From the IMG/VR virus record IMGVR_UViG_3300047095_000752, positions 62,001 through 126,000 of that record: 64,000 nt of DNA. One strand, 5' to 3'. Of this stretch, positions 18,354 through 62,574 are shown piece after piece. Numbering within the stretch: position 1 is the first letter of the stretch; the number at the start of each line of letters is the position of its first letter. The translations under genes and the position numbers were made by a program. The notes under the pieces were generated by a model. It had not been told where the DNA came from and did not search any database. It saw only the letters and a program-made list of their open reading frames with translations.

Positions 18354-18366
18354 TAGAAATTTGTCC
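18354..18366 (-). promoter_or_regulatory. Putative phage late promoter RACA-N6-TA
   Basis: GGACAAATTTCTA upstream of beta-C; 4 copies in the window. Confidence 0.55.
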
Positions 18367-18426
18367 TACGATATGATATCATATGTATATGTAGTATGTA
18401 AAAAGTTTAAATAAAAGGATTTAAAT

Positions 18427-19191
18427 ATGCCTGTAAAATTGAAATATGATTTTGTTTACAATTTCTTTAAAGAAAAAGGTTGTGAATTATTAGAAACGGA
18501 ATATGTCGGTACACACACTAAAATGAGATATATATGTGAATGTGGTGATGAAAGTGTAATCTCATATAATAAGTTCCAACGAGGTAACAGATGCGCAAAA
18601 TGTGCCGGTAATGAAAAACATACATATGAAGAAGTATATAAGGCATTTGCCTCTAAAGGCTATGAGTTGTTAGAAACTGAATATGTTAATATAGGTACCA
18701 AAATGAGATATAAATGTGAATGTGGTAATGTAAGTGAAATAAGATTTTACGCTTTCAAAAGGGGAAGTGGATGTAAAAAATGTCAAATCGAAAATAATTC
18801 CGGAGAAAATCACTACAGATTTAAAAAAGATCGTTCCCGATTATGCCGAACTACTTATTTATCGTTTGATCTTAAAAAACTCCACATCTTAAAAGACGAT
18901 CCAAATTATGATAACCACCTTCAATCCAAACATAAAGCTCAATTAAATCCTTCCCGTTGGGCTAAATCCGAGTACGCTGTAGATCATATATTCCCTCGCG
19001 TAGCTTTCATAGATAACAATTTAGATAATATTCACGGGGGAGTATTAATCAAAGAAATCTGCAATCTCAGAGAAAACTTAAGAATAATAAATAGAAAAGA
19101 TAACCAAACAAAAGCCGGAAAATACTCCCAAGAAGACTTCCTCCAATGGTTTAACAATAACCTAAATAAAAAAATAAAAGCCAGTGTATAA
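18427..19191 (+). CDS. HNH-family putative homing endonuclease with zinc-ribbon repeats
   Basis: Repeats ELLETEYV..KMRYxCECG..F.RG..CxKC; VDHIFP...NLR...N..K; AAGGA RBS; the only convincing plus-strand gene. Confidence 0.85.
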   Translation: MPVKLKYDFVYNFFKEKGCELLETEYVGTHTKMRYICECGDESVISYNKFQRGNRCAKCAGNEKHTYEEVYKAFASKGYELLETEYVNIGTKMRYKCECGNVSEIRFYAFKRGSGCKKCQIENNSGENHYRFKKDRSRLCRTTYLSFDLKKLHILKDDPNYDNHLQSKHKAQLNPSRWAKSEYAVDHIFPRVAFIDNNLDNIHGGVLIKEICNLRENLRIINRKDNQTKAGKYSQEDFLQWFNNNLNKKIKASV

Positions 19192-19215
19192 ACTGACTTT
19201 AAATATTATAATATA

Positions 19216-21349
19216 TTATTTCATTTTTAGAAAATAAGGATTTTTTAAATTTGTGGAATAACGCTTAATGTTTGGTGTGTACATATACAGTTGGATGTTA
19301 ACATGAGACCCATCTCTCGGATATAACGCAAGAGCCACATTAAATGAACTTACATAGAAATTAATGTTACACATCCCATATTGGGCGATACTATTTATCA
19401 ATTGTGTTATCCTATGTCCGATTTTAGCATATCCTTTGAACATATCATACATCGAAGTTCACCATCGGTTTGTCATCCTTATAGGTCTTTTATAATATGC
19501 CGGTCCTATCGACTTGATCATTGGAGTATATACATAGAGATGCCAATGTATTAGCTTCCGACCATCCAGTCGGGGTGAGTGTAATATATCAACGCCTACA
19601 CTTGTCAGTGTATAAAAGTGAACACGTAATAACTCAAATCCAAGTATACTATCTATAAACATTTTTAATTTTTCTGTCACGGTTTGAATATTTTTATAGG
19701 TCATAACCCCATAGTCCCTAATAACATCGGTCGTTTATATGTATCGCCGGACATCCTATTACTGGCGGCATAAGCATAAATGTGAAATTTATAGCTATAT
19801 CCATTCGTTACCGAGAAAAAACCAATCCCAACATTACCGGTCGCACCATAAAAATTTATAGACCATATCTCGTGTCCTGTTATTTTTTCCATGAATTTAC
19901 TTAACATATGCGCGACTCTTCTAATAACATTAATGGGCATATTTAATCATCCTTATCATTTCTTTATTGGATTTTTTTGGTAAAGTTCCATGATTACTTA
20001 TGTACTTGTATATATTTAAATGTATTTGATCTGATGTTACATAAGCGCCGTGTTTAAAAATACGAACCCCTACATTTTTAGTTATAGGAAAGTAAATGAT
20101 GTCATAAAATCCAATTCCAAGAATCTTATTTATAAAGCGGATGAGCCGCCTCGCTATTTTTATAGTGAAACTACTCATGAATAGGCACCTTTCCATTGAA
20201 TGCATACGTCAGTACCCATGCCGCGTCGGATTATTTCGCATTTGTTCTTTATAAGACATCCCAAACGTATGAGCTTCAAGATGGAGCCAGCACGAAAACA
20301 TTCCTATATGTTCGTACATTATTATCCTTGACGTTGTATTATTTAGTACTATATAGTTTTTATTGTTAGGTTGTTCAAAGGATTTTATATGGGTTCTGAT
20401 GTCATATATAAGGGCGCTTGATACCGATTTATTTATTGCGTTTAAAAATTTTTCAATCCAATATGATGAATCGTAGATCCATTCGTCCATTTGTGTTTTA
20501 TGTGAAAGCATACTAATCTTTTTTTATTAATTTTTTTGATATTAAAATATACTTGGTTGATAGCGGTCGGACGCTATTATGACGAGATCGCATTTGTTCT
20601 CCTACGCTTACTTTACCATTCCTCATGTAAACTCCTTTTAAAGTTAATAAATAATATGGTGCATACAACAGAATATATGTAAGCTTTTTGAATTTCTTTT
20701 GGATAAATAAATTACATAGTGTGATTCTGTATATCTTAAAAAGTGATTTGTTAAGGTGGTGTGTATATAAAAATCTAAATTAAAATTACTAACTACGTGA
20801 AATACCTTATTTATAAACTTTGCGATAATATATAGGGTGTGCCCAGTATACTCTTCAAAATAAGGTGCTATATTTATCATTTGTAATAGCTTATTTTATG
20901 ATGTAAAAATGAAATGCATAAAAATCCGTATCTATTATTATTCATTATTTTAAAGTTAGATTGGTGCAGAGCTATATTATTTGTTGGTATTCCAACGTGG
21001 ACCATATATCTTATAAGTGATGTGTGTTGAGCCGTGATAGTATTTACAAAGAGTCGCAGTATATTTGATAAATTACCTACAATTGTCACATATGCTTTTC
21101 GCATTTGATTGAAATTCATTATATTGTATACCTTATTTTAAACACAGTAAAGTAAACTTGTAATAGATGATGAGTTCTTAAATTTAATACTGAGAGTACA
21201 GATGGGATGGAGTAGTTCTCAATTGCTAAAACAACTATGTGATGAATATCGGGGCGTGATATATTTAATGCATTTATAAGCAATCTAATAGTGGAGCCTA
21301 CATTAAGACATGTCAGTTTAATGCAAGTATTATAGTGGTTACTAATCAT
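19216..21349 (-). CDS. Tandem array of 8 short paralogous hypothetical ORFs (76-100 aa)
   Basis: ORFs at 19216, 19459, 19701, 19930, 20209, 20644, 20877, 21119; overlapping stop/start codons; shared helix (L/I)xxFI(N/D)xI. Confidence 0.6.
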
Positions 21350-21515
21350 TTCTGTATACTTTATAAAAATCTATGATTACATCCAATGCTAAGCTAGCAA
21401 TTATACCTACTATTGCAGATTCTATAAAATTCATATTCCATATTTGATCTGTTACAATTATACATGTGAGGACGAATAAAAAATACGATACAGTACGTAA
21501 CCAAGGTCGATTCAT
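21342..21515 (-). CDS. Small membrane protein (57 aa, not in ORF track)
   Basis: MNRPWLRTVSYFLFVLTCIIV...AIVGIIASLALDVII; ATGA overlap and GGAGG RBS. Confidence 0.6.
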   Translation of the reverse strand: MNRPWLRTVSYFLFVLTCIIVTDQIWNMNFIESAIVGIIASLALDVIIDFYKVYRND

Positions 21516-22292: not shown

Positions 22293-22311
22293 TTCACGAA
22301 AAAATCTCCAT

Positions 22312-23506: not shown

Positions 23507-24664
23507 TTAATCAGTGAGTTTGCCTTTAAACCATTCCATGAACTCTTCTTGGTCGTATTTACCGGACTTCTGTCCATTCTCTTCTCTTGGTATTATTCTC
23601 AAGTTTTCTCTTAAATTGCAAATATTTTTTACTATTAGAGGACCATGAATATTATCTAGATCATTATCTATAAAAGCTTTACGGGGGAATATGTGATCTA
23701 CCGTGTAATCAGATCTATCCCATATATTACTTGATGCCTTGGCGACTTTTTGGGATTGGATGTGATTATTGTAGTTTGGATCGTCTTTTAATATATGTAG
23801 TTTACCATAATCAAACCCAAGATATGTCATTCTTAGAATACGGGTTCGATCTGGGTTAAATCTTGGATTGTTCTCACCTCTAACTTTATCATCTAAATAA
23901 CATTCCCGACACCGTTGTCCTATATTTTTAAAGTTATTAAATTTCATTTTAAATGTATGATTTCGGTCACATTTCATTATAAGGTATTTATGAGCATTTA
24001 TATATGTTTTACTTAATAAACTATAACCAAAACTTTCTATATGACTTTTAACGACTTCGTATTCGGGTCGAAATTTACCAAAACATTCTGGACATCGGTG
24101 ACCCACGTGAACAAACCCGACAAAACTCATTTCAAATATGTGATTATCCGGGCACTTGATTTTCATGTTTGTTTTATTGTTGATGTATTCTGTATCTAAC
24201 AGTAAATATCCTTCAACATTTATTTTAGACTTTACATAATTAAAATCATTTTTACGTTCCTGTGCAAATCGTATTGAGACGCACTTATTACATCGATTAT
24301 CCTGACTATAAAAACTGCTAAACCGTACCTTATATGTGTGGTCTGCGGGACATTTTATTGTTATTTTTGAGTTTACACCCTTATAATTTCCTATATCAAT
24401 TAATGTGTAACCATAGTCATTTAGTATTTTAGATATTTCATCAGATCCATGCTTGACCTCTTTCTTAATACATTTCTTACAACTAGTAGTCCGTCTAAAA
24501 TTATTATATGGTATCTCCGATATATTACCGCATGAGCATTTATATTTCATTTTGGTTTGTGTATTAATATATTCTTCTTTACTGACTAATAATACACAGT
24601 TTCGATCTAAATATGTTTGTAATACTTGTTCGTAGGGTACGGGTTTAGACATATGAATTTTCAT
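23507..24664 (-). CDS. HNH-family putative homing endonuclease with 4 zinc-ribbon repeats
   Basis: Repeats LLxxxYIN...KCxxxH.F...RCxxC; VDHIFP...NLRENLRII; likely start ATG 24664 (ORF track starts at 24778). Confidence 0.85.
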   Translation of the reverse strand: MKIHMSKPVPYEQVLQTYLDRNCVLLVSKEEYINTQTKMKYKCSCGNISEIPYNNFRRTTSCKKCIKKEVKHGSDEISKILNDYGYTLIDIGNYKGVNSKITIKCPADHTYKVRFSSFYSQDNRCNKCVSIRFAQERKNDFNYVKSKINVEGYLLLDTEYINNKTNMKIKCPDNHIFEMSFVGFVHVGHRCPECFGKFRPEYEVVKSHIESFGYSLLSKTYINAHKYLIMKCDRNHTFKMKFNNFKNIGQRCRECYLDDKVRGENNPRFNPDRTRILRMTYLGFDYGKLHILKDDPNYNNHIQSQKVAKASSNIWDRSDYTVDHIFPRKAFIDNDLDNIHGPLIVKNICNLRENLRIIPREENGQKSGKYDQEEFMEWFKGKLTD

Positions 24665-24723
24665 TCTAAAAATACCTACATGAACTTGTCGTGTAGGTAG
24701 TATATTTAATTTATTTATTTGAA

Positions 24724-26364
24724 CTAAGCTATGGTATAAGTGACACCATAATCTTTTAAACTTTCTTTTAATCCCCATTTATAAGCTAACACCATCAATA
24801 GGGGAAATTTGTAGGATCCCATGTACCCTATGAGGTATGCGCCGTTTTGGAGGAACTTACTGTGGATCTTCATGATCGAATACGATGATTCGAAGCGCCC
24901 TACGTTAATTGTGGGATAGAATATCGGATAACGTACGATCTGGTTGACTAGTATTTTCTGTTGTCCATTTATCACGAACGTTCCATTCGCAGTAAGATAC
25001 GGTAGGTCCACATGCACTTCGTGTATGTTACCCTCCGGATCTTTAAGTTGGATCTGGTAGCGCTCCTTGATCGATTGATATATCTCCGATGCTCCTGTAT
25101 GCACTTGTTTTACTTCCATACTCTTCAATTTCAGCGGAACATCTTTATCTTCGAGGAGTTTGAAGGCATCTGAGATATCATCTTTTAAATTAACTCTAAA
25201 ATCAGTCATACGTTTATTTAAAATATGTGCAGGGCTTTGATAATCTAAAAGCTTGGGTACATCGGCGGACTTAATGATCATATTCGTTGAAAAGTTTTTG
25301 GCAGGATCTCTTTTTAATAATTGAGTTACAAGTTTATTTATAATCTCAGCTTGCTTCTCAGGACTCTTCCGATCAATCTTCTTTGAAATTTCTTTAGCCT
25401 TCTCAAGATCACCCATAACGCTATAAACAACAGATCTTGTGATTAATTTATTATGATTTTCAAAATCTTTTTCGCGATCAATTGTAGAGTCAGCTTTTGT
25501 ATAGTTCTTAATAGCGTCCTGTACGATTTGTTCGTGCTGCTTACTTACGAGAGGAGATTCCTTAGTGGCTATTTGAGCTACTTCTTCAGCGTGATTTGAT
25601 TCCCCTGTGACTCCATCTGTATTTTGTTGTAGTCTTAATAGTATATTTTTAACTCGGACTAAACTATTATTTTTAGCTAAGACATCATACAGCTTTACGA
25701 AGCGCCCACCATCTTTATTATAAACGAACATTATAATTTTTTCGAATGGTATTGATTCTCTTTTACCAGCTTCTAACATTAATAACATATTAAAAAAGAT
25801 ATAACACTTCTTGTAGAATAGTTTATCGGATAAAGGCTTATCGACGTTCACGGCATATAACAAGATTGTTTCAAATTTATCTTTATCGATCTCACTAGCA
25901 GTTTCTAAATATTGATTATATAATTTAGATCCCTGACCTGTATCAAATCTTTTTGTACGATACATTAAGTCTACGGCGTTTAAATACCGTGTGGCATCGT
26001 AAAAGAAGTTGTATCCATTTACTTTAGTGTACTCACCGGGTCTACCTTTAATTGGTAGGAGGTCTCGATCTTTAATTAATTTTGTATATTCTGGGGTGAG
26101 ATATGATTGTGGTCTTGTTATGGTAGGTACAAAAACATATCGAGCATATTGCTTTTTGAAATTTAAAAAGTTATAGGTCTCTAATAAATTTACATTTTCA
26201 CCATAGAAATAAAAACATAAGTTCTTTTTACTATTTGGATCTTTTATTGGTATGACTAATTCATCATACGGTATAAAAAGCTTTTGGTTTAATAAATTCA
26301 TGTTGAGTACCTTATGTTCTTTAAATCCGGTATTGAAAATAATTGGGTTATTACGTAAACCCAA
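24724..26364 (-). CDS. rpoB: DNA-directed RNA polymerase beta subunit, N-terminal fragment with large N-terminal extension
   Basis: LPYLTANGTFVINGQQKILVNQIVRYP matches beta region IPLMTxxGTFxINGxERVxVSQLxRSP; likely start ATG 26301. Confidence 0.85.
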   Translation of the reverse strand: MGLRNNPIIFNTGFKEHKVLNMNLLNQKLFIPYDELVIPIKDPNSKKNLCFYFYGENVNLLETYNFLNFKKQYARYVFVPTITRPQSYLTPEYTKLIKDRDLLPIKGRPGEYTKVNGYNFFYDATRYLNAVDLMYRTKRFDTGQGSKLYNQYLETASEIDKDKFETILLYAVNVDKPLSDKLFYKKCYIFFNMLLMLEAGKRESIPFEKIIMFVYNKDGGRFVKLYDVLAKNNSLVRVKNILLRLQQNTDGVTGESNHAEEVAQIATKESPLVSKQHEQIVQDAIKNYTKADSTIDREKDFENHNKLITRSVVYSVMGDLEKAKEISKKIDRKSPEKQAEIINKLVTQLLKRDPAKNFSTNMIIKSADVPKLLDYQSPAHILNKRMTDFRVNLKDDISDAFKLLEDKDVPLKLKSMEVKQVHTGASEIYQSIKERYQIQLKDPEGNIHEVHVDLPYLTANGTFVINGQQKILVNQIVRYPIFYPTINVGRFESSYSIMKIHSKFLQNGAYLIGYMGSYKFPLLMVLAYKWGLKESLKDYGVTYTIA

Positions 26365-26399
26365 TTATAGTATATATTTATATATTTTTCAATATATTA

Positions 26400-27827
26400 T
26401 TAAAATAGAATACCCTTTTGCATAGCATCCATAACCTGTGCCCGTTCGGACTGTAGTGAGCTTACACACTGGGGATCGCCTTGGCATTGTTGGAGTAGAC
26501 CATCTATATTGCTTAATTTCAGTTTATTCATATAATTGATACAAGCTTGTTGTTTACCGCCAGTTAAATTTGCACAACCTTGTTCAGTATACTTTTCCTG
26601 TTTACGAGCTTGATGTCTTTTCCATAGTATTGAAGCTGCAGTACCGGCGGCGGCGAGACCACCGGCAACAGCAGTCGCCGTTTGTGCTGTTGGGGACATT
26701 TGTTTATATCCATTTATAACGGCATTAGCACCATTTTTAGCCCGTTGCATTATACTTGGACCCTTGGGTTCTTCCGGTGTACCCCTAACCATATTAGCCA
26801 GATCATAATATGTATATCCGGCTACACCCATACCTGCAGTCGCTCTAAGTGGTTTACGCATTAAATTACGGCCAGCTCCAGTCAATGAGTTACCGACCCA
26901 TTTTGGGGCGACTCCAGATTTAGCAACGGCGGCTCCACCTTTTCTAAGCCCTAATCCAGCCATTTTAGGTAGGAATCTGGCAGCCGCACCAATAGCAGCC
27001 CCAATTTCATTAAATGTATATACGCCATCAACCCAAGGTGAATAATAAGATTCTTCAAAGTTCATAGCCTCAGACATCTCATCTTCATCAAACTCATTGG
27101 CTACAAAATTAACAGGGGTATCGACTGTAGCCTTGTCTAAAATAGATGGTTTAGAACTTGTTATAATACTTCTAATCTTATTAATATTAGTATTTACACC
27201 TTTTTGATATAATAGCTTGTATTCTTTAGTTCCATTCTTAGGTGAATACTCACAATATATAATCTTATCGAATGGGACTTCGGAGTCAATGTTCTTAATA
27301 TTTTTAATCATAGCTAAATATAATGGTAGAATCTTTTTAGTTAATAACTTTTCGGAAAATTCCAAATCTGTATTTAATGTATATAATAATACTTTTTCGG
27401 AGTTACTCGGTGAATTATTACATAATAATTTAAAATATGAACTCATCAATTCTCTAAACTTCTGATGATTGAATACAGTGATATTGTACCTGTCAATGAT
27501 AGCATCAAAATATCGATTAGCGTCTATATAGGTGTGAAATTTATCGAAGTCTTTTAGCTCGTTCAAGTTAGCTTTAATAGGTACAAAACCAGCATCTTTT
27601 ATACCGACCTTGTAATCTGAATTCATATAGGTTCGGAACGGGGCTGGAGATGTGGGTACAACATACTTACGTATACCGTTACCTGTAAATTTAGACCCTT
27701 TTATTGCAGAAAGAGTATCTTCGTTTTCACTTAACACCATTATTGACAGTAGCTTACCACCAACTGGGGATGTGGTTACACTTATGTCATTATATGAAAT
27801 GTAGGGTTTAATTGATGAATATATCAT
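26400..27827 (-). CDS. Putative internal virion protein (N-domain shared with RNAP beta-N; Ala/Gly-rich, Cys-rich C-terminus)
   Basis: Manual alignment to both neighbours; function inferred. Confidence 0.55.
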   Translation of the reverse strand: MIYSSIKPYISYNDISVTTSPVGGKLLSIMVLSENEDTLSAIKGSKFTGNGIRKYVVPTSPAPFRTYMNSDYKVGIKDAGFVPIKANLNELKDFDKFHTYIDANRYFDAIIDRYNITVFNHQKFRELMSSYFKLLCNNSPSNSEKVLLYTLNTDLEFSEKLLTKKILPLYLAMIKNIKNIDSEVPFDKIIYCEYSPKNGTKEYKLLYQKGVNTNINKIRSIITSSKPSILDKATVDTPVNFVANEFDEDEMSEAMNFEESYYSPWVDGVYTFNEIGAAIGAAARFLPKMAGLGLRKGGAAVAKSGVAPKWVGNSLTGAGRNLMRKPLRATAGMGVAGYTYYDLANMVRGTPEEPKGPSIMQRAKNGANAVINGYKQMSPTAQTATAVAGGLAAAGTAASILWKRHQARKQEKYTEQGCANLTGGKQQACINYMNKLKLSNIDGLLQQCQGDPQCVSSLQSERAQVMDAMQKGILF

Positions 27828-27833
27828 TATTTA

Positions 27834-28796: not shown

Positions 28797-28813
28797 AAAA
28801 TATAGATTTACTA

Positions 28814-28826
28814 TATAAATTTGTCC
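28814..28826 (-). promoter_or_regulatory. Putative late promoter RACA-N6-TA
   Basis: GGACAAATTTATA, just downstream of a terminator at 28845-28874. Confidence 0.55.
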
Positions 28827-28894
28827 TAAAAATAAAAAGTCTACAAAAAAACACGGTAGTTATAATACCGTGTTAATCATTATTTTTTATTATA

Positions 28895-31449: not shown

Positions 31450-31512
31450 GTCAATTGTAACACCTTTTCGGGTTAAGTTAGTAGTTCCAATATTTATACA
31501 TCATATATAAAT

Positions 31513-32765: not shown

Positions 32766-32781
32766 ATCATATTCTCCTTTA

Positions 32782-32794
32782 TATAAATTTGTTC
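32782..32794 (-). promoter_or_regulatory. Putative late promoter RACA-N6-TA
   Basis: GAACAAATTTATA directly upstream of the lysozyme RBS. Confidence 0.55.
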
Positions 32795-33885: not shown

Positions 33886-33918
33886 ACATCTCCTTCAAAG
33901 TTAAAGTAAAATCCATTA

Positions 33919-33968
33919 CAATATTAAATATATATAATAAAAAAATAAAGGGAGGATGATACCTCCCT
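33919..33968 (-). promoter_or_regulatory. Terminator + AT-rich promoter-like motif
   Basis: AGGGAGG/CCTCCCT stem abutting CAATATTAAATATATATAAT. Confidence 0.6.
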
Positions 33969-53600: not shown

Positions 53601-55727
53601 GATTTAACTATTAATATAAGGGTAGATGATATTGCAGATTCTATCATGTCGATGAAATCCATAGTTAACATCTATAACCTCCTGTCGGTAAGATTTGATG
53701 TTATTCGGATATCAGCGTAACCCTTCTTTATATTTACATAATATAAATTGTTGGCATTTGATAGCCCATTAAAATAAATCAGTTTTAGATTATCTACTAT
53801 ATAGTTTTTTGGTCTAGGTGGGCTATAAATGAGTATGTCACCAACACCATCGATACGATATGGTTCAAACATTAAGGTATTGACTATAAAATGAACATGC
53901 CGATCATGTACACTTGATGCGGCTGGTGCATATGCTACTAAATTTAAGTACAAAAGTGAATTCCTAATATCATATAAATTAAAAATAGTTTTTATTATTG
54001 TCATTACCGCTGGTATGGATGCTGATATATAATTTCTGGTGCTACTCATGGCATTCTCTATAATCGTATATTTCGATTCCGCGCCCCATAAATGAAATTG
54101 AGAATAAAGTTGGCTTGTGAATAAATGCTACCGCTAAGTCGACCTTTGTGTCAAAGTCGAATCCTAACGTCATAGTGGTTGAGGCATACGGTTTATATCT
54201 GTATATATCGGGAGTTAAGCTAACTTCAACATACCCTAAAAAACTTTTACAACAATCATGGACGGCGTATCTATACATAGAATCGCAGTATATGTCAGTA
54301 ACCTTTCTACTCTGCACTAAATATGACATCAAATGACTACATAATGTTATAACGAATTTACGTTTAAATATTTTACATAATATACACAGAACACTACACA
54401 CACTATATTCTATTTTTCGAACTAACACGAGATTCAATTCAATATCCTTTCGTGGTTTTACTCTCTTGTTAAAATATATATAGTGAGTGTTTTAATATAC
54501 ACTGAGTGTTAGATGTAACCTGTCGGTCAAGGGTGAACCACTGTATTCATAGTCCAAATGTAATATATCCGACTTGTGAATATTAAATACATTTATTTCA
54601 TTATTGACGTTAGTTGTATATGTTTTGTATGACTTTATTTGGTCATATACTTTAAGTGAAATTAACGGCTCTCTGTATAATGTCATATAATTATCAAAAC
54701 CGTCCAGATCAGTTTGCGAAGAAAAGAATACTAAATTCTGAGACTTCATATCGATTGAACATATATCTTTTGGCTTACATATAATATGATAAAAAAGAAC
54801 AAAAGATTTGGATATTGAGTTTTCAATTTTAGCATATAAGTCCCGTATAAAATCTTCAGCCATACGCATATTGTTACCTCCCTTAAGTTCGATTACAAAA
54901 ATAAATATCATAAGGTATGATATCAATAATTAATATATATAATTAAAAATCACTTACCAAAATTAATGGTAAGTGATTTAATGTAGGACTTTTAACTTAT
55001 ATTAGAATGCTGTATATTCCTCGATGGGTATTATGTCGAAGTGAGCGCTACGAGGAAATGATAACCCTATTATATGCCTTTTGTGTATACATGTTTTGAA
55101 ATCGGGAGTTTGGCATGGGTAGTAATTAAAATCTTTCAGAAAAATTGTCAAACCTTCGAATAAAGGGGTGTCATCAGACCATCTAACTTTTTGTATATAT
55201 CTCGGATACAAAACCGAATAATGACCATCTAAAATTAATGGGTTGTATGTGAATATGTATATTATTTCACCAATTGGATCTAGGATACGACGTAATAATT
55301 TAAAAAGTATAGGTACACATTTTAAATACAGGTCGCTTATCAATTGCTTCAGTCTCCGGTTTGTTAACATCTAAAATGCGTTATAATCACAAAGTTTTAT
55401 CATTTCAAATGACGTGTCATCCACCCTTTTTATTCCTATTAAATTCTTCTTACGGACCAGCATTCTATAGTCTTCTCGACCCGTTTCGTAATCGTTAAAA
55501 TCTTGAGCCGAAAATGTCGTATAATAATTTGTATATAATTCTAGACCCCACAGTACCTTATCTTTATGTTTCGGGTATACAATTGAGGTATGGCAATATA
55601 TAGTAATAGGGTTTGTAACAAATATGTATGTGACTTTATTTATGGGTTGTATAATATTTCTAATTAAATGAAATAATAATTCTATTTTATGTGCTATTTG
55701 AGTGTATTTGTCAAAGTCTTCGTTCAT
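50693..55727 (-). CDS. Tandem array of ~12 short paralogous hypothetical ORFs (108-144 aa) plus one unrelated ORF (51326-51892)
   Basis: ORFs at 50693, 51003, 51874, 52260, 52613, 52981, 53309, 53672, 54042, 54492, 55002, 55371; KIExxIxxI(L/F)xxL...I..PxYxY pattern; coupled stops/starts. Confidence 0.65.
54924..54979 (-). promoter_or_regulatory. Terminator + AT-rich promoter-like motif
   Basis: AAATCACTTACCA/TGGTAAGTGATTT stem abutting CAATAATTAATATATATAAT. Confidence 0.65.
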
Positions 55728-55766
55728 TTGATTTCCTGAAGTTTAAGATTAAACCATTCTATGAAT

Positions 55767-57323
55767 TTATTTCTTCTTTTCTTTTAATTTTTCTATACTC
55801 AACTCACTGAGGGGTTCGCCGAATAATACTTTTTCGATCTGTGAATATTTCTTCGAGTCTTTTGAGATCAACCCAAATGTTAAACTTTTACCAAGGTTCT
55901 CATAGGCGACCCCCAGAGACCACGATATAATCGAAGGAAGAGATTTAATGCTATGTAATTCCGGATCGTATGGATCCTTCAATCTGGCTGCAATCATCGG
56001 ATCTTTCTTATTTCTTAAAATCGTTGCGAGGATGACCTCAAGGTGGCAACTATCCCAAGGTCCAAAAGTACTTAGAGCTTCGTAAAACTTCTTGTATAGG
56101 TTCTCTGGGGTCTCCCATGGACCCTTGCCCGCAACCAATGAGTCTAGGCTCTGGGCGATCTTTTCAGGAGCGATCTTAAAGAATTTAATTGTAAATAATT
56201 TAACATCTTTACCATACATTAAAGTGATACTATCAGCAGTTTCATTATAATCATCGTGGATATTAATTTCAACAGGCATTTCAATAGTAGCATTAACTTC
56301 AATATTACCAATATACATTCTAAAATAGCCTAAAGGTAACTTATAAGTATTTCCTACTTTTTCAATTGCATACTCGTCCTTGAAGATACTTTTATTGATC
56401 TTAATCGTTGTTACTTCAGCGCTGGAGTATAGATCGTTATCTTTTTGATATACCATACCTGATAAATATTTTTCTTCGTCATCTGTAATAGAGTCCGCAA
56501 GTTCTTTTAAGATATCCACCTTCTTGAAGACTACGGCCCCGCCTGTGTGAAATGAATTGTGTGTCTGAACATTATTATTCAAAAATTCTTCGGAGTCAGT
56601 TTTAAGATCATATACATATCCACAATATCCCTCTATACCGGGAACTACCTGCTCAATATCAATGTAATCATTAATATCCTGTATAAGCTTATCTGAAGGC
56701 ACAGCATTCTTTAAAGTCCAATATACAAGTCCGTCTTCAGTATTAATATCAAAGTTACAAGTATGACTTAAATGATCTGCTACAAGCTTCAACTGTGATA
56801 CAAAGTTAAAACTAAAAATCTTAGACTTGGTGTTGACTTTATCGTCGGACTTAATATTATCAAATAAGAAATGATATAAAAGGTATGTTAAGTTACTAGT
56901 ACTTATTTTAGATAAATAATCAGGATTAATACAAAAATTATATATCGAATCGCCATTAAAATATTCGGAATGATTTGCAATTATATGTAAATTAGGATCT
57001 TCAAATATATTCAACAAAATGTCAAATAGTATATCTACATCAGGCGGCTCTACCCCGTAAACAAATTCTAATTTACGTTCGGTGTTATCAACCCAAATTC
57101 TATCATGGAACATTACTATATCTTTAGCTTCAACCACCGTAGGTTGCCCGTCAAGCGACTGAATCCATACAGGGTGGTCTTCTTGGCAAAACAGCATATG
57201 TCCAGTCACAGTGCGAATAAAGCACATTGGTGCCGTTGGTGTATGCCTTTGGATCTTATATGCTCGGGTTAAACCGTCTTTACCCACGACATTGAGATCT
57301 AACTCTTTAGTTTCTAAATTCAT
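55767..57323 (-). CDS. rpoC: Split-intein C-part (256 aa) fused to RNA polymerase beta' C-terminal fragment
   Basis: CQEDHPVW (block B), VYDL (block F), QTHN|SFHTGG (block G + trigger loop), HLEVILATI, AYEN. Confidence 0.9.
   Translation of the reverse strand: MNLETKELDLNVVGKDGLTRAYKIQRHTPTAPMCFIRTVTGHMLFCQEDHPVWIQSLDGQPTVVEAKDIVMFHDRIWVDNTERKLEFVYGVEPPDVDILFDILLNIFEDPNLHIIANHSEYFNGDSIYNFCINPDYLSKISTSNLTYLLYHFLFDNIKSDDKVNTKSKIFSFNFVSQLKLVADHLSHTCNFDINTEDGLVYWTLKNAVPSDKLIQDINDYIDIEQVVPGIEGYCGYVYDLKTDSEEFLNNNVQTHNSFHTGGAVVFKKVDILKELADSITDDEEKYLSGMVYQKDNDLYSSAEVTTIKINKSIFKDEYAIEKVGNTYKLPLGYFRMYIGNIEVNATIEMPVEINIHDDYNETADSITLMYGKDVKLFTIKFFKIAPEKIAQSLDSLVAGKGPWETPENLYKKFYEALSTFGPWDSCHLEVILATILRNKKDPMIAARLKDPYDPELHSIKSLPSIISWSLGVAYENLGKSLTFGLISKDSKKYSQIEKVLFGEPLSELSIEKLKEKKK
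56556..57323 (-). mobile_element. IntC half of atypically split intein with degenerate endonuclease-like insert
   Basis: Residues 1-256; ends His-Asn followed by Ser+1. Confidence 0.88.
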
Positions 57324-57333
57324 TTACAGTTCC

Positions 57334-57603
57334 TTAAATAATAGGTGAAGATGCTAATTGCCAATATACGGGCGCGTAATATTCTTCCGGGACATGTGAT
57401 TTTTTGTAGTTCTTTTCGCCTTCCCAGCAACCCATATGTTTATATTGACTAAACTTTTTATTATATCTTAATAAACATATCTTAAATTCACGAGGTTCTT
57501 CGGAATAATATAATGCACGTGTTAAACAGTCGTTGTCAGGGAGTTTATCAACGGTTTTAATCCAGTTGCTTAAATTAATTTCGTCTTTACTTATTTTGTG
57601 CAT
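57334..57603 (-). CDS. DUF551-like small protein
   Basis: WIKTVDKLPD...PVYWQL. Confidence 0.65.
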   Translation of the reverse strand: MHKISKDEINLSNWIKTVDKLPDNDCLTRALYYSEEPREFKICLLRYNKKFSQYKHMGCWEGEKNYKKSHVPEEYYAPVYWQLASSPII

Positions 57604-57605
57604 TG

Positions 57606-59324
57606 TTAAGCAACTTTCTTCTTAAATACATTATTTCCACAATCCCAAACACGATCATATTCATTACTTTGCATATTTTGCCACTCGGTTAATGTTGGAT
57701 CAAATGATTCTAATAGATTGTTTAATTTATGTTTTTGAAATTTAAGTCTGGAATCTCGATTCATATAATCATTGGTATAAAAGTAATTTGGTGAGCCTGT
57801 ATGCGTTAATTCAAATCCAGAGCTTTCATATATATTACCATATCCATATCTTAGATCTGAATAGGTTATTATATCACACTTGATATCTTTTGAGAAGTCA
57901 TTTACTAACTTTTGGAAACCACCGACTACATTTGTATTTAATTTTGTGCAGAATCTTAATATTTCGTAATTGTCTTTGGATCTAATTACTGTAATCATGC
58001 TAATTAAATTATTATTACTATCATAAAGTCCATAATTGAATCCACGATGAGTGTAACCTTGTATATGATTTTGGTCTAAAAATAACTCTGCGTCCTTGAA
58101 GGGAACCTTATGTATATTTAGATCCGATGTATTATATGTATTTTCATATATTTTTAATTTATTTGCAATAATCGAACAAACTATATCTTGCTTATTAAAC
58201 CATTCATCATCGAATATATGAATTAAATCAATTCCTTTTTCTTTACATAAATTCGTTTTATTGATATGGTAATGTTCATCTTTGCCTTGTTTTTCGGAGT
58301 GCCAATAGAGTCCGTTGAATTCAATTGCAAGTTTGTAGTCTGGAATGTAAATGTCGATTTCAAGTGGATTTATTAATGACCGGTCATTTTCTATTATAAT
58401 TGTATTTTCTGGTAGGATCGATTTAACGAATTCGTAAACTTCGTGCTCGCCTTTGGAAGTGCCTGACATACCCTGATGTGGGTAACAATTAAAACATCTT
58501 GGTATGTGTCCATCCGCTAAATTATCTAAAAAGATATGATTACAAGTATTACATTTGAATTCATATCGGTTATCTCGTGATATTCCATTATATTCATCTA
58601 GGCTAAATACTGGCGTTACTTTACTTAATAATCTTTTTGAATTCAACAATTTTATATAAAATACTTCTTTTAATTTAACTTTACCAGCGGCAGACGATAT
58701 ATAGTGTTTATGACCATATCGTTTAACCATTGTGTTTTCGGCTTTGTTTCTTATCTCTTTTATTTTAGATACGTTATCCACACCGTATTTTTCTTGTACT
58801 GTATTTTTAATCTTTTCACGAATTTCATTAGATTCGAATGGAGTTAGTGCTCCATATTTTTCTAAATTAGTTTTATTTCGTTTTTCGTTTATTTCTTTAT
58901 TGTCAAACAGATTTACACTACCATATCGCTCAATTCGTGTATTAAGTATTTTATTCTTAACTTTTTCATTTTTTGCCGATTGTTCATACCCATACTTTTT
59001 TAGATTTGTGTTTTTTATTTTTTGTTTTACATCTTCATTTTGAAACCCATATTCAGATCCATATCTCTCCAGATTTGTTTGTTTAATTTTGTTTTTAGTT
59101 TCTGTATTTAATCCCCTGCATTTATTAGAGCATGTTTTATAAAATCCATCTTTAAAACTTTTATATGGGGTTGGGCTTTTACAAACTTTACACAAATGTT
59201 CGTCATTAACTGAAATATATTTAATATAATATTCTGATATATGTATTTCTTTGTGTGAATGCATTATATGATTTTTTAAAGAATTTGTATCATCAAACAC
59301 TCTCTGGCAGATCTGACATTGCAT
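57606..59324 (-). CDS. Free-standing putative homing endonuclease (Zn finger, TNLERYG repeats, Vsr-like/Hef-like nuclease)
   Basis: CQIC..H..H; TNL(E/K)(R/K)YG repeats; EIDIYIPDYKLAIEFNGLYWH; LIHIFDDEW; NHIQG, RFC, YSDLRYG. Confidence 0.85.
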   Translation of the reverse strand: MQCQICQRVFDDTNSLKNHIMHSHKEIHISEYYIKYISVNDEHLCKVCKSPTPYKSFKDGFYKTCSNKCRGLNTETKNKIKQTNLERYGSEYGFQNEDVKQKIKNTNLKKYGYEQSAKNEKVKNKILNTRIERYGSVNLFDNKEINEKRNKTNLEKYGALTPFESNEIREKIKNTVQEKYGVDNVSKIKEIRNKAENTMVKRYGHKHYISSAAGKVKLKEVFYIKLLNSKRLLSKVTPVFSLDEYNGISRDNRYEFKCNTCNHIFLDNLADGHIPRCFNCYPHQGMSGTSKGEHEVYEFVKSILPENTIIIENDRSLINPLEIDIYIPDYKLAIEFNGLYWHSEKQGKDEHYHINKTNLCKEKGIDLIHIFDDEWFNKQDIVCSIIANKLKIYENTYNTSDLNIHKVPFKDAELFLDQNHIQGYTHRGFNYGLYDSNNNLISMITVIRSKDNYEILRFCTKLNTNVVGGFQKLVNDFSKDIKCDIITYSDLRYGYGNIYESSGFELTHTGSPNYFYTNDYMNRDSRLKFQKHKLNNLLESFDPTLTEWQNMQSNEYDRVWDCGNNVFKKKVA

Positions 59325-59343
59325 TTAATATTTTCTTTCGTAA

Positions 59344-60834
59344 TTAGTTTTGGTCCCAAAGTTCATCTAATGAGATTATACCATGCTTTTCCGTATTTAC
59401 CAACCCCGTTGAACACTTCATAATCTTTTCTGATAACGAACAACAGGCTTGGGCAGCAAGCATACCCAGTGCCCGTGACTTTACCTGATAAATCAAATCG
59501 CCATAACAAGTGCGGCATATTTCACGACTTTTGCAAAATGTAGGGCTACGGAGTTCTACGAACTTTCCGATATGTGCATCAGTCAGTCTTTCTACCTTCC
59601 GATCCTTCTGATTTATAATATAACGACCTTGCATCCGACCAAATAATTCGGATGTTATCTTAAGTTTTAGTCCTCGTTTAGTTCCACAATCCGCATTTGT
59701 GATGTCACCCTCACACGATCCAATCGAATACACCATTTTACGATATGCATATCCACCGAACGCGGTATTTACGGCACGGTCAATAATACCCTTACGACTA
59801 CCTGCGGCGGATTCTAGGTATTGCTCAGGATCGAAACCATCAACCAACGCTTTTTCGACAGGCGGAAGGAGTTCGCCACTGGCGTTACTGATCAATCCTT
59901 TGGATACCATAATCTGACGCAATTGCGATCCACCCTTGGCCGCCCCACTTGCTATCTGGATATAAAGTCCTTCTTCTTGTGTCCTCAAATATTCCATCAA
60001 GGCAACATCCATCTCATCTAAAATTTTAATTTGTTTATTTACATCCGGCTCAGCCTTAAGTTTCTTTGAAAGGCTTTTTAATTCGGGTGAAGGTATAAAC
60101 ATATCTAAACTAATAGTCTGGGGATATTGAGTAGCAGCCTCGAAGGACATCTTGCACATCTTATCAATTGTAAGTGCGAAATCAGCTTTGTTTTTAAGCA
60201 TCACTTCTTTTAATACTTTACTCACATCTCTCGCATTCATAGGTTTATCTATAAATGGAATGTAAGATGGGAGAACACTATTGAATATAACTCTACCTGC
60301 GGTTGTGTTTGTAAGCCCGATATTCGTGTTGATCCGGACGGGATCCCCCGGATGTAGTTTTTCAGCATCTTGTACATTGTTTATAACTCTTATAGGTTTT
60401 TTATTTTCCAAGTAAGTAATTGTAAAAATACCGATATTCATTTCTTTTGATAGTGAAAAGTTAGGAGAATTTAAGAATTCAAAGCCCTGTGTTGTAATCA
60501 TTTTATTCTTAACTTCATTCTGAGCTTCAATTGAAATTGGGACGACAATAGCCATTTGGTCACCATCGAAATCCGCCATGTAAGGACCCACAACAACCGG
60601 GTGAATATCAATAGTCGGTCCATCGATTATAGTAACGTAAGCACCTTGGATCCGTCCTCTTTCGACGTTAGGATCACGTTTATATAATACTACTCGATTT
60701 TTATCTTCGATTTCTTTTACTGCGATTTTTCGAATAGTATCATAAATTATAGGATTTACTTTATATCCCTTAGAGATGTATTTCAATATCTTACGGATAT
60801 CGTCGATGGAGACTTTTTCACTTTCATGTAACAT
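59344..60834 (-). CDS. rpoC: RNA polymerase beta' middle (catalytic) fragment fused to split-intein N-part
   Basis: YMADFDGDQM, SGAAKG, GSRKGIIDRAVNTAFGGYAYRKM (bridge helix), DCGT/RSPTFC/CRTCYG, GMLAAQ. Confidence 0.95.
   Translation of the reverse strand: MLHESEKVSIDDIRKILKYISKGYKVNPIIYDTIRKIAVKEIEDKNRVVLYKRDPNVERGRIQGAYVTIIDGPTIDIHPVVVGPYMADFDGDQMAIVVPISIEAQNEVKNKMITTQGFEFLNSPNFSLSKEMNIGIFTITYLENKKPIRVINNVQDAEKLHPGDPVRINTNIGLTNTTAGRVIFNSVLPSYIPFIDKPMNARDVSKVLKEVMLKNKADFALTIDKMCKMSFEAATQYPQTISLDMFIPSPELKSLSKKLKAEPDVNKQIKILDEMDVALMEYLRTQEEGLYIQIASGAAKGGSQLRQIMVSKGLISNASGELLPPVEKALVDGFDPEQYLESAAGSRKGIIDRAVNTAFGGYAYRKMVYSIGSCEGDITNADCGTKRGLKLKITSELFGRMQGRYIINQKDRKVERLTDAHIGKFVELRSPTFCKSREICRTCYGDLIYQVKSRALGMLAAQACCSLSEKIMKCSTGLVNTEKHGIISLDELWDQN
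59347..59415 (-). mobile_element. IntN half (23 aa) of atypically split intein
   Basis: CSTGLVNTEKHGIISLDELWDQN-stop, intein block A pattern beginning with Cys1. Confidence 0.85.
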
Positions 60835-60855
60835 TCAGGATTCCTTTAATACGTA

Positions 60856-61218
60856 TTAATCCAATTGCTTATATCGTTTATCTAATTCGTTAATTAAAGC
60901 GTGGATACTATCGTCCATTTTATATTTATTTGCTGTCGCCCAAGATCCAGCATAAGCATTATCATCTTCTTTTATTTCCGGTGTTATTTCAAGAACGGAT
61001 ACGAGAGCCTCATACAGTTTGTGTGTATCTATTGATTTGTATGTACTGTCTCTATCTCTTGATTTATCAAGTTCACTTCTTAATTGTAGTAATTCTTGTA
61101 TATACTCAGCATTCTGTTTTTTTAATGTACTGATAATGGATATTGAATCTATATTTGATCCTTCATACTTATCCATATCGTTTATATTGAGACCAAAAGA
61201 TCCATTTTCAGATTCCAT
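60856..61218 (-). CDS. Hypothetical protein
   Basis: 120 aa, between beta' fragments. Confidence 0.65.
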   Translation of the reverse strand: MESENGSFGLNINDMDKYEGSNIDSISIISTLKKQNAEYIQELLQLRSELDKSRDRDSTYKSIDTHKLYEALVSVLEITPEIKEDDNAYAGSWATANKYKMDDSIHALINELDKRYKQLD

Positions 61219-61233
61219 TTAAATACCCTTTTG

Positions 61234-61560
61234 TTAAATGCCTCTGCTGTACTCTTCTTGTGCATCTGCTAAGACAGGTACAACATACCGAGTATAACCT
61301 CTTCGTCCATCACTTACAAATTTTGGGGCAGCGATAAAGTGGGCGGCTTGCTTATCATTCTTCATCTTAAATGGAAATTTACCATCCCATCCTTCGACTT
61401 TGTCTAAGTTCGTCTCGCCAACTTCAACTTTAGTACCATCTGATAATTTAATATCATTCGGGATACCATTACCTTCAAAATCATCATTAGCCTTATACTT
61501 GAGGATTTCTTTCTTGGTCATACTATCAATTTGTTCGAATATAATCTTTTTCAATACCAT
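61234..61560 (-). CDS. Hypothetical protein (possible head protein)
   Basis: 108 aa, AAGGA RBS, N-terminal IIFEQ. Confidence 0.65.
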   Translation of the reverse strand: MVLKKIIFEQIDSMTKKEILKYKANDDFEGNGIPNDIKLSDGTKVEVGETNLDKVEGWDGKFPFKMKNDKQAAHFIAAPKFVSDGRRGYTRYVVPVLADAQEEYSRGI

Positions 61561-61578
61561 TGTTATTTCCTTTGTGGG

Positions 61579-62499
61579 TTAATCGTCTTCTAATAAATCG
61601 GATTCTTGAGATAAGAATTTCTTAACTTCTATGTGAAATTCATCGGGAATCATGCTTTTGTATGGTGAATTAATAATGCCATATATAAGATATGGTTCAA
61701 AAAGCTGACACGCTAGTCGTAATGGTACACCAACATTACCAACTTTTAATTTATAATTCGGTGTAATGACCGCACGAGCAGAATAGTCCACCCGCTTACC
61801 CAGAAGATGGTTTCGTATCAGACCTTCCTTCTTGGATACTTTTACTTTTACAAGCTCATATAGATCTCGCATAAATAATTGCATTCTATAACTGAAAATA
61901 TCAAACAACTGACCGGATACACTACCTAACTGAGTTCCTGCCATAATTATTTTTTGATATAACTTTGTGAGATCATCGATCTGGATATCCCCAGTAATTT
62001 CGTCAATCTGAATTGGTCTATATTCGGGTGAAATTACAGGTAATTTATTTATAAAGAAAGTTCGATCATCAACTGCTTTGTAAAGTACATCGATAATCTT
62101 ATTTCGGTCTCCACCCTCTTCACCGGTCGAAAAACGTATCTTATGGATGTTGTTTACAAATGCAGTCATACCATTAATATCACCCATATCATCTTCGACT
62201 AAATTATTATTCGAATCCAGTGAAAATATGGCTTCCCCAGATAATAAGTCGGGGATGCGTCTAAAGATACGCTTCTCTAAAATATCATATAGAAATGGGT
62301 GAACAACATTACAGTTTAGATCAATCCAAGAATAATTAGAACGTCTCTCTTTAGATCCTTCTACCCCGAAGATAGTTTCTGAATATAAACCTTGAGGGTG
62401 GAAATTCATAGACTTATCGAAGTAGATTTGATGTGATGTTATAGCTTCTAGTGCCTTCTTTTCTTTTAAAAAGACATCTACGTGAATTGGTTCGATCAT
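61579..62499 (-). CDS. rpoC: RNA polymerase beta' N-terminal fragment
   Basis: GLYSETIFG, LPVISPEYRP, DDLTKLYQKII, GLIRNHLLGKRVDYSARAVI, LFEPY. Confidence 0.93.
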   Translation of the reverse strand: MIEPIHVDVFLKEKKALEAITSHQIYFDKSMNFHPQGLYSETIFGVEGSKERRSNYSWIDLNCNVVHPFLYDILEKRIFRRIPDLLSGEAIFSLDSNNNLVEDDMGDINGMTAFVNNIHKIRFSTGEEGGDRNKIIDVLYKAVDDRTFFINKLPVISPEYRPIQIDEITGDIQIDDLTKLYQKIIMAGTQLGSVSGQLFDIFSYRMQLFMRDLYELVKVKVSKKEGLIRNHLLGKRVDYSARAVITPNYKLKVGNVGVPLRLACQLFEPYLIYGIINSPYKSMIPDEFHIEVKKFLSQESDLLEDD

Positions 62500-62510
62500 A
62501 AAAATACCTC

Positions 62511-62574
62511 TAAAAATTTGTCCAATTAATTAAATTTTATAAAAAAACATGGTGGAAATACATATTCCACCATG
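62511..62574 (-). promoter_or_regulatory. Terminator (62541-62574) followed by putative late promoter (62511-62523)
   Basis: CATGGTGGAA/TTCCACCATG stem; GGACAAATTTTTA. Confidence 0.6.

What the first reader, a model, noticed from the sequence alone, without database searches (positions are those of the whole stretch)
18354..62523. Candidate late promoter G(G/A)ACA-AATTTN-TA before RNAP, putative head and lysis genes
Seen: GGACAAATTTCTA (18354-18366, beta-C), GGACAAATTTATA (28814-28826, head/beta-N operon), GAACAAATTTATA (32782-32794, lysozyme) and GGACAAATTTTTA (62511-62523, beta' operon). All are on the coding strand within ~10-40 nt of a start codon, two directly after terminators. Known: the AR9 non-virion RNAP late consensus is AACA-N6-TA. 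Inference: the RNAP here is expressed late (virion enzyme) by a second phage polymerase. AR9 reads template-strand uracils, so base modification is worth checking, although nothing here demonstrates it.
Basis: partly seen in the sequence, partly recalled or inferred. Interest (0 to 1): 0.62.

Follow-up and report, generated by a model that had tools for sequence, protein, structure and literature searches.

The report
Late promoter of lake jumbo phage
A short DNA signal (GGACAAAT, then T-purine four bases on) sits before about twenty structural, lysis and virion-RNA-polymerase operons of an uncultivated lake jumbo phage; it looks like a longer, stricter relative of the late promoter that phage AR9's own second RNA polymerase reads.

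Summary
The four sites exist as described, all on the minus (coding) strand (4 found, 0.07 expected). They belong to a larger set. In the 245-kb phage record, GGACAAAT is the most enriched 8-mer upstream of genes. Seventeen of its 22 copies are intergenic and gene-oriented, against 0.45 expected. The consensus is GGACAAAT-NNN-T-R-T-A-A, with about 21 strong sites. Three partial genomes of related lake phages show the same top word: GGACAAA(T/C) in one, GAACAAA in two. The spacing ACA-N6-T-R matches the AR9 late promoter, AACA-N6-T-A/G with the last base as start. The sites precede tail-tube-like, portal, tail-lysin, virion-structural and lysozyme genes, and the RNA polymerase set most like AR9's virion enzyme. 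A second AT-rich motif resembles AR9's early promoter. It precedes replication genes, a second unsplit RNA polymerase set most like AR9's non-virion enzyme, and a 492-aa protein whose model matches AR9 gp226 (Z 14.6). The late-promoter reading is therefore well supported, but no start site is mapped. Three details need correction. The core is GGACAAAT, not AATTT. The "head" label has no support. A ThyX gene argues against uracil DNA. This is a new variant of a known kind.

The parts
18350..18366 (-). Late-type promoter site GGACAAATTTCTATATA. The predicted start is the A at window 18354. It lies before the virion RNAP beta gene.
   Evidence: score 20.2
15830..18313 (-). Virion-type RNAP beta (827 aa). 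It covers residues 270-979 of the paralogous 1012-aa beta.
28810..28826 (-). Late-type promoter site GGACAAATTTATATAGT, 16 nt after a terminator's T run.
   Evidence: (score 21.4)
28850..28874 (-). Terminator-like hairpin with a T run. It ends the lysozyme operon just upstream of the 28826 promoter.
23507..28796 (-). Operon behind the 28826 site. It holds a 315-aa K/A/G-rich protein (not capsid-like) and a 475-aa protein of unknown function. It also holds a 525/546-aa protein with only weak RNAP-beta PHROG hits, and an HNH endonuclease.
32778..32794 (-). Late-type promoter site GAACAAATTTATATAAA. It is the only strong site with A at -11, which gives AR9's AACA.
   Evidence: score 18.3
28895..32765 (-). 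Operon behind the 32794 site. It holds a phage lysozyme (32334-32765), a 274-aa protein, a 152-aa protein, a Dam-like D12 N6-adenine methyltransferase (30128-31000) and four small ORFs.
62507..62523 (-). Late-type promoter site GGACAAATTTTTAGAGG, 15 nt after a terminator's T run. The Shine-Dalgarno AGAGG begins at the predicted start base.
   Evidence: (score 17.5)
62548..62574 (-). Hairpin followed by TTTTTTT on the minus strand, upstream of the 62523 promoter.
55002..62499 (-). Virion-type RNAP beta' operon. Three ORFs (61579-62499, 59344-60834, 55767-57323) are colinear with residues 7-309, 343-752 and 806-900 of the unsplit paralogue. Small ORFs and a homing endonuclease (57606-59324) lie between them.
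1003..1034 (-). Early-type AT-rich promoter site, TTATATATATTAATTATTGA class. It heads the operon that runs out of the window to the non-virion RNAP beta' and beta genes.
33912..33943 (-). Early-type AT-rich promoter site. Others lie at window 15572, 22847, 23496, 38696, 41968 and 54948. They mark the other promoter class, between the late operons.

Best explanation
GGACAAAT-N3-T-R is the late (or middle/late) promoter of this uncultivated freshwater jumbo phage. It is read by the phage's own non-virion multisubunit RNA polymerase. That enzyme would consist of an unsplit beta (1012 aa) and beta' (902 aa) plus a 492-aa sigma-like subunit of the AR9 gp226 / phiKZ gp68 family. All three are made early, from AT-rich promoters that the injected virion polymerase reads. 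By analogy with AR9, the conserved block lies at -12 to -5, the T at -1 and the invariant purine at +1. There is no -35 element, and the gp226-like subunit would contact the melted -11 to -8 region. Late transcription then yields virion proteins, lysozyme and the split virion polymerase encoded in this window, which is packaged for the next infection. Shown here: the motif, its enrichment, orientation and conservation, the gene content of the operons, the two polymerase sets and the gp226-like fold. Inferred: the timing, the start base, which enzyme reads the motif, and which strand is read.
For: The motif is the top unbiased upstream 8-mer, with 17 of 22 copies intergenic and gene-oriented. 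A matrix scan gives 21 strong sites against 1.5 expected. The same core tops the upstream words in relatives: G001 (GGACAAA[T/C]) and G002 and G004 (GAACAAA). Their virion beta'N is only 37-55% identical to this phage's. The AR9 late consensus is AACA-(6N)-TA/G with the last base as start (PMC5312081; PMC7598289). Rebuilt from 83 mapped AR9 starts, that matrix correlates best with this motif at zero offset (r 0.62). AR9's own virion beta'N promoter reads AACAAATTATTA. Position 12 is a purine in 17 of the 17 intergenic GGACAAAT sites. At two sites the Shine-Dalgarno sequence begins at position 12-13, so the start cannot lie further downstream. Four sites lie 1-16 nt after a terminator. Downstream genes include a tail-tube-like protein, virion structural proteins, a tail lysin, a portal and a lysozyme, plus a baseplate-hub-like lead. 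The window's beta' pieces match AR9 virion beta' best (102 against 62.8 bits; 73.6 against 69.7). The other set matches AR9 non-virion beta' best (82 against 56.6; 87.8 against 79.7). The gp226-like protein gives Foldseek top hits 7um0_A and 7s01_A (AR9 gp226) and 8que_B (phiKZ nvRNAP), with the next hit at E above 0.1. VIA-align gives Z 14.6 over 323 residues, with the next unrelated row at Z 3.2. About 35 early-type AT-rich sites resemble AR9's annotated early promoter. They precede DNA polymerase, topoisomerase II, SbcC, the non-virion polymerase and the gp226-like gene. No sigma-70 region 2 gene was found.
Against: There are no RNA data, because only lake-water DNA runs hold this phage. 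Timing and start base are therefore untested. Position -11 is G in 20 of 21 sites, whereas AR9 strictly needs template U at -11 and -10. In relative G001 the T-A lies one base closer (N5). The gp226-like model has low confidence (pLDDT 59), and sequence searches with AR9 gp226 find nothing. Some non-structural genes sit behind motif sites: an exonuclease at genome 204198, and a UvsX-like gene behind a weak CGACAAAT. The large terminase sits behind an AT-rich variant motif instead. The beta subunits do not discriminate virion from non-virion. The major capsid and sheath genes were not identified. The record is about 78% complete.
Confidence: 0.75

Rival explanations
1. GGACA is a -35-like hexamer (compare TTGACA) of an ordinary two-part promoter. 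It would be read by host RNA polymerase with sigma-70 or a phage sigma, with a -10 box about 17 nt downstream.
For: The consensus scan paired AGGACA-17-TATATT and TGGACA-18-TATGAT at two of the sites.
Against: Positions 22-27 after the motif carry only 0.15-0.46 bits each, and the two bases before GGACA are not conserved. The invariant AAT and the T-R-T-A-A block have no place in a -35/-10 layout. In 9 of 21 sites the start codon lies at motif position 35 or earlier. A start about 35 nt after the hexamer would therefore fall at or inside the gene. No sigma-70 region 2 gene is present.
Confidence: 0.04
2. The motif is an early or middle promoter read by the injected virion polymerase. The polymerase genes behind it would then be the non-virion set.
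For: Early promoters of polymerase-encoding jumbo phages are short, highly conserved motifs near -10 that can be found by computation. Late ones usually cannot (PMC7598289).
Against: A different AT-rich motif with about 35 sites matches AR9's early promoter. It precedes small ORFs, replication genes and the other polymerase set. The genes behind GGACAAAT are virion and lysis genes. The beta' behind it is closest to AR9's virion beta'. A middle class read by the non-virion enzyme cannot be told apart from a late class here.
Confidence: 0.07
3. This is a T4-style late promoter. The T-R-T-A-A-A block would be a -10 element (compare TATAAATA) read by host polymerase with a gp55-like factor. GGACAAAT would be an upstream activator site, and the start would lie about 7 nt further downstream.
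For: The best sites read TATATAAA, and the relatives keep TAAA or AA after the core.
Against: Position 12 is G in 9 of 21 sites. The window 62523 and genome 238966 sites read TAGAGG and TGAGGA there, and these serve as the Shine-Dalgarno sequence 7-8 nt before ATG, so the start cannot lie downstream of them. The invariant part is the upstream 8-mer, not the TAAA. The phage carries two polymerases of its own and a gp226-like factor. A gp55 homologue was not searched for.
Confidence: 0.07
4. The motif acts at another level. It could be an operator for a phage repressor or activator, or an RNA processing or translation signal in the 5' leaders.
For: A conserved word upstream of start codons does not by itself prove initiation.
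Against: Four sites lie directly after terminators, where a new transcript must begin. The distance to the start codon varies from 24 to 147 nt from the first motif base, which does not fit a translation signal. The spacing matches a mapped promoter class. The motif is depleted inside genes.
Confidence: 0.04

Closest known systems
Late promoters of Bacillus phage AR9 (AACA-(6N)-T-A/G, read by the non-virion RNA polymerase with gp226)
   Same: The ACA triplet is at the same distance (N6) from a T-purine pair, and there is no -35 element. Leaders are short, the sites precede virion, lysis and virion-polymerase genes, and some stand in tandem with early promoters. The matrix correlation peaks at zero offset. 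Homologues of virion and non-virion beta' and a gp226-like protein are present.
   Different: The core is an invariant 8-mer, GGACAAAT, not a 4-mer. Position -11 is G (template C), where AR9 needs template U. Conserved T-A-A follows the start. There are about 21 sites, against 118 in AR9. The phage encodes ThyX, so its DNA probably holds thymine. The non-virion beta and beta' are unsplit and much closer to bacterial enzymes than AR9's are.
Late promoters of Pseudomonas phage phiKZ (T-A-T-G, G = start; non-virion polymerase with gp68)
   Same: A phage-encoded non-virion polymerase with a gp68/gp226-family subunit works on thymine DNA. The model of the 492-aa protein also matches phiKZ nvRNAP chain B.
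   Different: phiKZ shows no conservation upstream of -3. Here the conserved block lies at -12 to -5, and TATG is not general.
Early promoters of AR9 (AAATATATATTAT..TTGA), for the second motif found here
   Same: The run TATATATATTA followed by TTGA is shared. There are about 35 sites here and 34 predicted in AR9. They lie before small ORFs, replication genes and non-virion polymerase genes.
   Different: There is a one-base shift between the AT run and TTGA, and the flanks differ.
T4 late promoter (TATAAATA at -10; gp55 with host polymerase)
   Same: It is a single compact AT-rich element without a -35.
   Different: The invariant part here is G/C-containing and lies upstream. No dependence on host polymerase is indicated.

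Membership tests
AR9-type non-virion-RNAP late promoter | ACA at -10 to -8, six bases, then T(-1) and purine(+1) | tested here: met
   ACA is invariant. T is at position 11 in 17 of 21 sites and a purine at position 12 in 21 of 21. The matrix correlation with 83 mapped AR9 promoters is best at zero offset. Relative G001 has N5 instead of N6.
AR9-type non-virion-RNAP late promoter | A at -11 (template U-11, required by AR9 gp226) | tested here: not met
   G is at -11 in 20 of 21 sites. A occurs only at window 32794. Relatives G002 and G004 do have A, as GAACAAA.
AR9-type non-virion-RNAP late promoter | Transcription starts at the final purine | not testable with these tools
   No RNA run holds this phage. 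The only indirect bound is that the Shine-Dalgarno sequence begins at position 12-13 at two sites.
AR9-type non-virion-RNAP late promoter | Precedes late genes (virion, lysis, virion polymerase) | tested here: met
   Tail-tube-like, virion structural, tail lysin, portal, lysozyme and virion-type beta and beta' genes lie behind the sites. Exceptions are an exonuclease, and the terminase, which sits behind another motif.
AR9-type non-virion-RNAP late promoter | The genome encodes a second (non-virion) multisubunit polymerase with a gp226/gp68-family specificity subunit | tested here: met
   A second beta and beta' set is present and is closest to AR9 non-virion beta'. The 492-aa protein's model matches AR9 gp226 at Z 14.6. 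The model has low confidence (pLDDT 59), and there is no sequence-level hit.
AR9-type non-virion-RNAP late promoter | Uracil-containing DNA; recognition of template-strand uracils | tested here: inconclusive
   ThyX is present (E 4e-40) and absent from AR9. This points to thymine DNA. No chemistry can be done here.
Sigma-70-type promoter | A -35 hexamer plus a conserved -10 hexamer 16-18 nt downstream, with the start about 7 nt after it | tested here: not met
   There is no conserved -10. In 9 of 21 sites the start codon comes too soon.
phiKZ-type late promoter | T-A-T-G overlapping the start, with nothing conserved upstream | tested here: not met
   The conserved 8-mer lies upstream, and TATG is present in only a few sites.

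The most novel reading that the evidence does not exclude
This lineage may hold a natural thymine-tolerant version of the AR9 mechanism. A gp226-like subunit would read the melted promoter (template 3'-CCTGTTTA-5') on ordinary T-DNA. A longer 8-base core would then do the job that uracil does in AR9, namely telling phage promoters apart from host DNA. The G/A switch at -11 between sister clades would record co-evolution of the promoter with the specificity subunit.
Probability: 0.3. Interest if true: 0.7.

Novelty: new variant of a known kind. Interest (0 to 1): 0.5.

Why it matters
Late promoters of polymerase-encoding jumbo phages have been hard to find by computation. A 2020 review (PMC7598289) states that bioinformatics fails for them. 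Only AR9 and phiKZ have defined late consensus sequences, and the two differ strongly. Here an uncultivated freshwater lineage shows a late-type motif that sequence statistics alone can find. It is conserved across at least four genomes and has the AR9 spacing, but in a phage that probably has thymine DNA and bacterial-like, unsplit non-virion subunits. That yields a ready-made operon map for these genomes. It links the AR9 scheme to a wider group of phages. It also provides a compact three-protein system (beta, beta', gp226-like) in which to test how template-strand promoter reading works without uracil.

Tried and rejected
- The loose AACA-N6-TA pattern is not enriched in the window.
- No near relative exists among 50,697 deposited phages. 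PHROG and Pfam left most late-operon proteins unnamed.
- AR9 gp226 found no sequence match, either by phmmer or with its PHROG. The PHROG control matched nothing anywhere, so that blank says little.
- PDB sequence searches with the beta and beta' genes showed only that both sets are closer to bacterial enzymes than to AR9's. They did not separate virion from non-virion. Beta tblastn did not discriminate either.
- No run on record as RNA holds the stretch. Laying four DNA runs showed strain variants only and nothing about starts.
- The predicted complex of the gp226-like protein with beta' residues 1-460 gave no verdict. It is not evidence either way.
- The crude operon-level promoter classes of orthologues agree for late genes (30 of 34). 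They are noisy for early genes, because the early-motif pattern and the 8-kb walk are rough.
- The atlas search gave no lead for the 315-aa 'head' candidate. Its four homologues are unnamed.
- Rfam and tRNA scans of the window found nothing.
- Two scripts returned no answer and were rerun.
- The major capsid and sheath genes were not identified.
Full report
**What the window is.** The window is bases 62001-126000 of a 245,225-bp IMG/VR virus record, about 78% complete by CheckV and about 34% G+C. Only lake-water metagenome DNA runs hold it. No deposited phage is close at the DNA level. Its RNA polymerase beta reaches only about 22-31% identity to any record. Coordinates written 'g' below are genome coordinates, equal to window coordinate plus 62000.

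**The observation.** They lie about 11-40 nt before start codons. Two follow hairpin-plus-T-run terminators. The short AR9 pattern AACA-N6-TA is not enriched in the window.

**The true extent of the motif.**
- The most enriched 8-mer is GGACAAAT, ranking above all Shine-Dalgarno words.
- Of its 22 copies, 17 are intergenic and within 150 nt upstream of a gene on the same strand. That compares with 0.45 expected (P about 2e-16). Coding sequence is depleted, with 5 copies against 11.8 expected.
- The logo is GGACAAAT-w-w-n-T-R-T-A-a with nothing conserved further upstream. Position 12 is a purine in every site.
- A matrix scan finds 21 sites scoring 15 or more, against 1.5 in shuffles. Twenty of them lie 9-132 nt before a start codon.

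**Conservation in relatives.** Using the first beta' piece as query, I found partial genomes of related phages in IMG/VR: G001 (55% identity), G002 with its near-duplicate G003, and G004 (37-40%).
- The same unbiased count gives GGACAAA(C/T) as the top upstream word in G001.
- It gives (T)AGAACAAA as the top upstream word in G002 and G004.
- The family core is therefore G-R-A-C-A-A-A. The A form contains AR9's AACA, and within this genome the lysozyme promoter (window 32794) has it too.
- The beta' operon has such a site in all four genomes, one small gene further upstream in the relatives.
- Genes of the late class here are in the late class of the relatives in 30 of 34 orthologue pairs. That test is crude.

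**Comparison with AR9.** The AR9 late consensus is AACA-(6N)-TA/G with the last base as the start, found at 94 of 118 late starts (PMC5312081; PMC7598289).
- I rebuilt the AR9 matrix from 84 listed starts on the AR9 genome. Of these, 83 have AACA at -11 to -8, T at -1 is 94%, and +1 is A or G.
- Its correlation with this phage's matrix peaks at zero offset (r 0.62; other offsets 0.09-0.40). This places GGACAAAT at -12 to -5, T at -1 and the purine at +1.
- AAT is the commonest triplet after AACA in AR9. AR9's own virion beta'N promoter reads AACAAATTATTA.
- The differences are G at -11, four more invariant bases, and T-A-A after the start.

**Geometry.** At window 62523 and at g238966 the Shine-Dalgarno sequence (AGAGG, GAGGA) begins at motif position 12-13, with ATG at position 24. 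The start therefore cannot lie further downstream. In 9 of 21 sites the start codon lies at position 35 or earlier. This rules out reading GGACA as a -35 hexamer, which a consensus scan had suggested at two sites. With +1 at position 12 the leaders are 12-71 nt for 19 sites.

**A second promoter class.** About 35 strong sites of the form (A/C)TTATATATATTAAnTATTGnA are almost all intergenic and gene-oriented. AR9's annotated early promoters read AAATATATATTAT..TTGA, the same apart from a one-base shift. The motif is also enriched in G002. It stands before the gp226-like gene in G000, G002 and G004.

**What lies behind each class.**
- Behind GGACAAAT lie a tail-tube-like protein, two virion structural proteins, a 1513-aa tail lysin, a portal, a phage lysozyme, a baseplate-hub-like lead and the window's polymerase genes.
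- Behind the AT-rich motif lie runs of small ORFs, DNA polymerase, topoisomerase II, SbcC, a helicase and the other polymerase set.
- Exceptions are an exonuclease behind g203876, a UvsX-like gene behind a weak CGACAAAT site, and the large terminase behind an AT-rich variant (ACTATATATATTTTAAAAAGAG).
- One locus has late and early sites in tandem (g152292 and g152277), as in AR9's continuously expressed genes.

**Two polymerases.**
- Set A (g51248-54286 beta, g55285-57993 beta') is unsplit and lies in the operon headed by the early site at window 1034.
- Set B lies in the window. Beta is at 15830-18313. Beta' is three ORFs colinear with Set A's beta', with a homing endonuclease between them.
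- Against the AR9 genome, Set B's first piece scores 102 bits to the annotated virion beta'N and 62.8 to the non-virion one. Set A's N part scores 82 to the non-virion one and 56.6 to the virion one.
- The C parts agree more weakly, 87.8 against 79.7 and 73.6 against 69.7. Beta does not discriminate.

**The specificity subunit.** A conserved 492-aa protein (g126498-127976, just past the window's end) lies behind the strongest early site.
- It has no family hit and no sequence match to AR9 gp226.
- Its model, built from four orthologues with pLDDT 59, has as its only significant PDB matches AR9 holoenzyme chain A and phiKZ nvRNAP chain B. The Foldseek E-values are 4e-5, 2.7e-4 and 5e-4, and the next hit is above 0.1.
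- VIA-align gives Z 14.6 over 323 colinear residues. The next unrelated row is at Z 3.2. Chain A is the 464-aa gp226.
- gp226 is the sigma-like subunit that reads the template strand at -11 to -8 (PMC9209446).
- A complex prediction gave no verdict.

**Base modification.** The genome encodes ThyX (E 4e-40), and AR9 has none. It has no ThyA and has a dCMP-deaminase-like gene. It also has a Dam-like methyltransferase in the lysozyme late operon. This argues for thymine, not uracil, DNA. With C rather than U opposite -11, AR9's uracil rule cannot hold here as such.

**Verdict.** The motif is real, and it is very likely a promoter (about 0.9). It is likely the late-class promoter of a non-virion polymerase with a gp226-like factor (about 0.75). 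The start is probably at the T-R purine (about 0.6). It is a new variant of the AR9-type late promoter in an uncultivated lineage. The 'head' label for window 27834-28796 is unsupported. That protein is K/A/G-rich with conserved cysteines and has only four unnamed homologues.

Noticed in passing
window 1034, 15572, 22847, 23496, 33943, 38696, 41968, 54948 (minus strand; first base of each 32-nt site): A second, strongly conserved AT-rich motif, (A/C)TTATATATATTAAnTATTGnA, has about 35 sites genome-wide. It resembles AR9's annotated early promoter and is the likely virion-polymerase promoter.
   Followed up: yes
window 54487; genome 548, 10831(+), 40612: A variant motif, ACTATATATATTTTAA(C/A)AAGAG, stands once before the large terminase gene. 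It may be a third (middle?) promoter class.
   Followed up: partly
genome 126498-127976 (minus), about 500 bases past the window's end (L018:2498-3976): A 492-aa protein has a model that matches AR9 gp226 and phiKZ gp68, the sigma-like subunit of the non-virion polymerase. It lies next to the virion beta' operon in all four related genomes.
   Followed up: yes
window 55767-62499: Virion-type beta' is encoded as three ORFs. The Rpb1 domain-2 match is split between the first two, with two small ORFs between them. A 572-aa homing endonuclease lies between the second and third. Rfam finds no group I intron. AR9's virion beta'N is likewise joined from three pieces.
   Followed up: partly
window 30128-31000 (minus): A Dam-like D12 N6-adenine DNA methyltransferase (E 2e-67) lies inside the late lysozyme operon.
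   Followed up: no
genome 184256-185035 (minus): A flavin-dependent thymidylate synthase, ThyX, is present here and absent from AR9. It argues against uracil DNA.
   Followed up: partly
genome 162565 (plus): A strong motif copy, GGACAGATTTATGTAAA, has no plus-strand gene for 2.6 kb. It may be an antisense promoter, as seen in AR9, or it may precede a missed small gene.
   Followed up: no
genome 54326-55270 (minus), between non-virion beta' and beta: A 314-aa protein has a CapR homology domain (PF21817, E 1.5e-9) and a weak zinc-knuckle match. Its role is unknown.
   Followed up: no
genome 223982-225058 and 226008-228326 (plus): A Volactin-family actin-like protein (E 4e-52) and a GH9 cellulase-like 772-aa protein lie in the late-strand block. 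The first is preceded by a TGACAAAT variant.
   Followed up: no
It has only four unnamed homologues and is not capsid-like.
   Followed up: partly
genome 152277-152292 (minus): Late-type and early-type sites stand in tandem before one 97-aa gene. This is the arrangement of AR9's continuously expressed genes.
   Followed up: no
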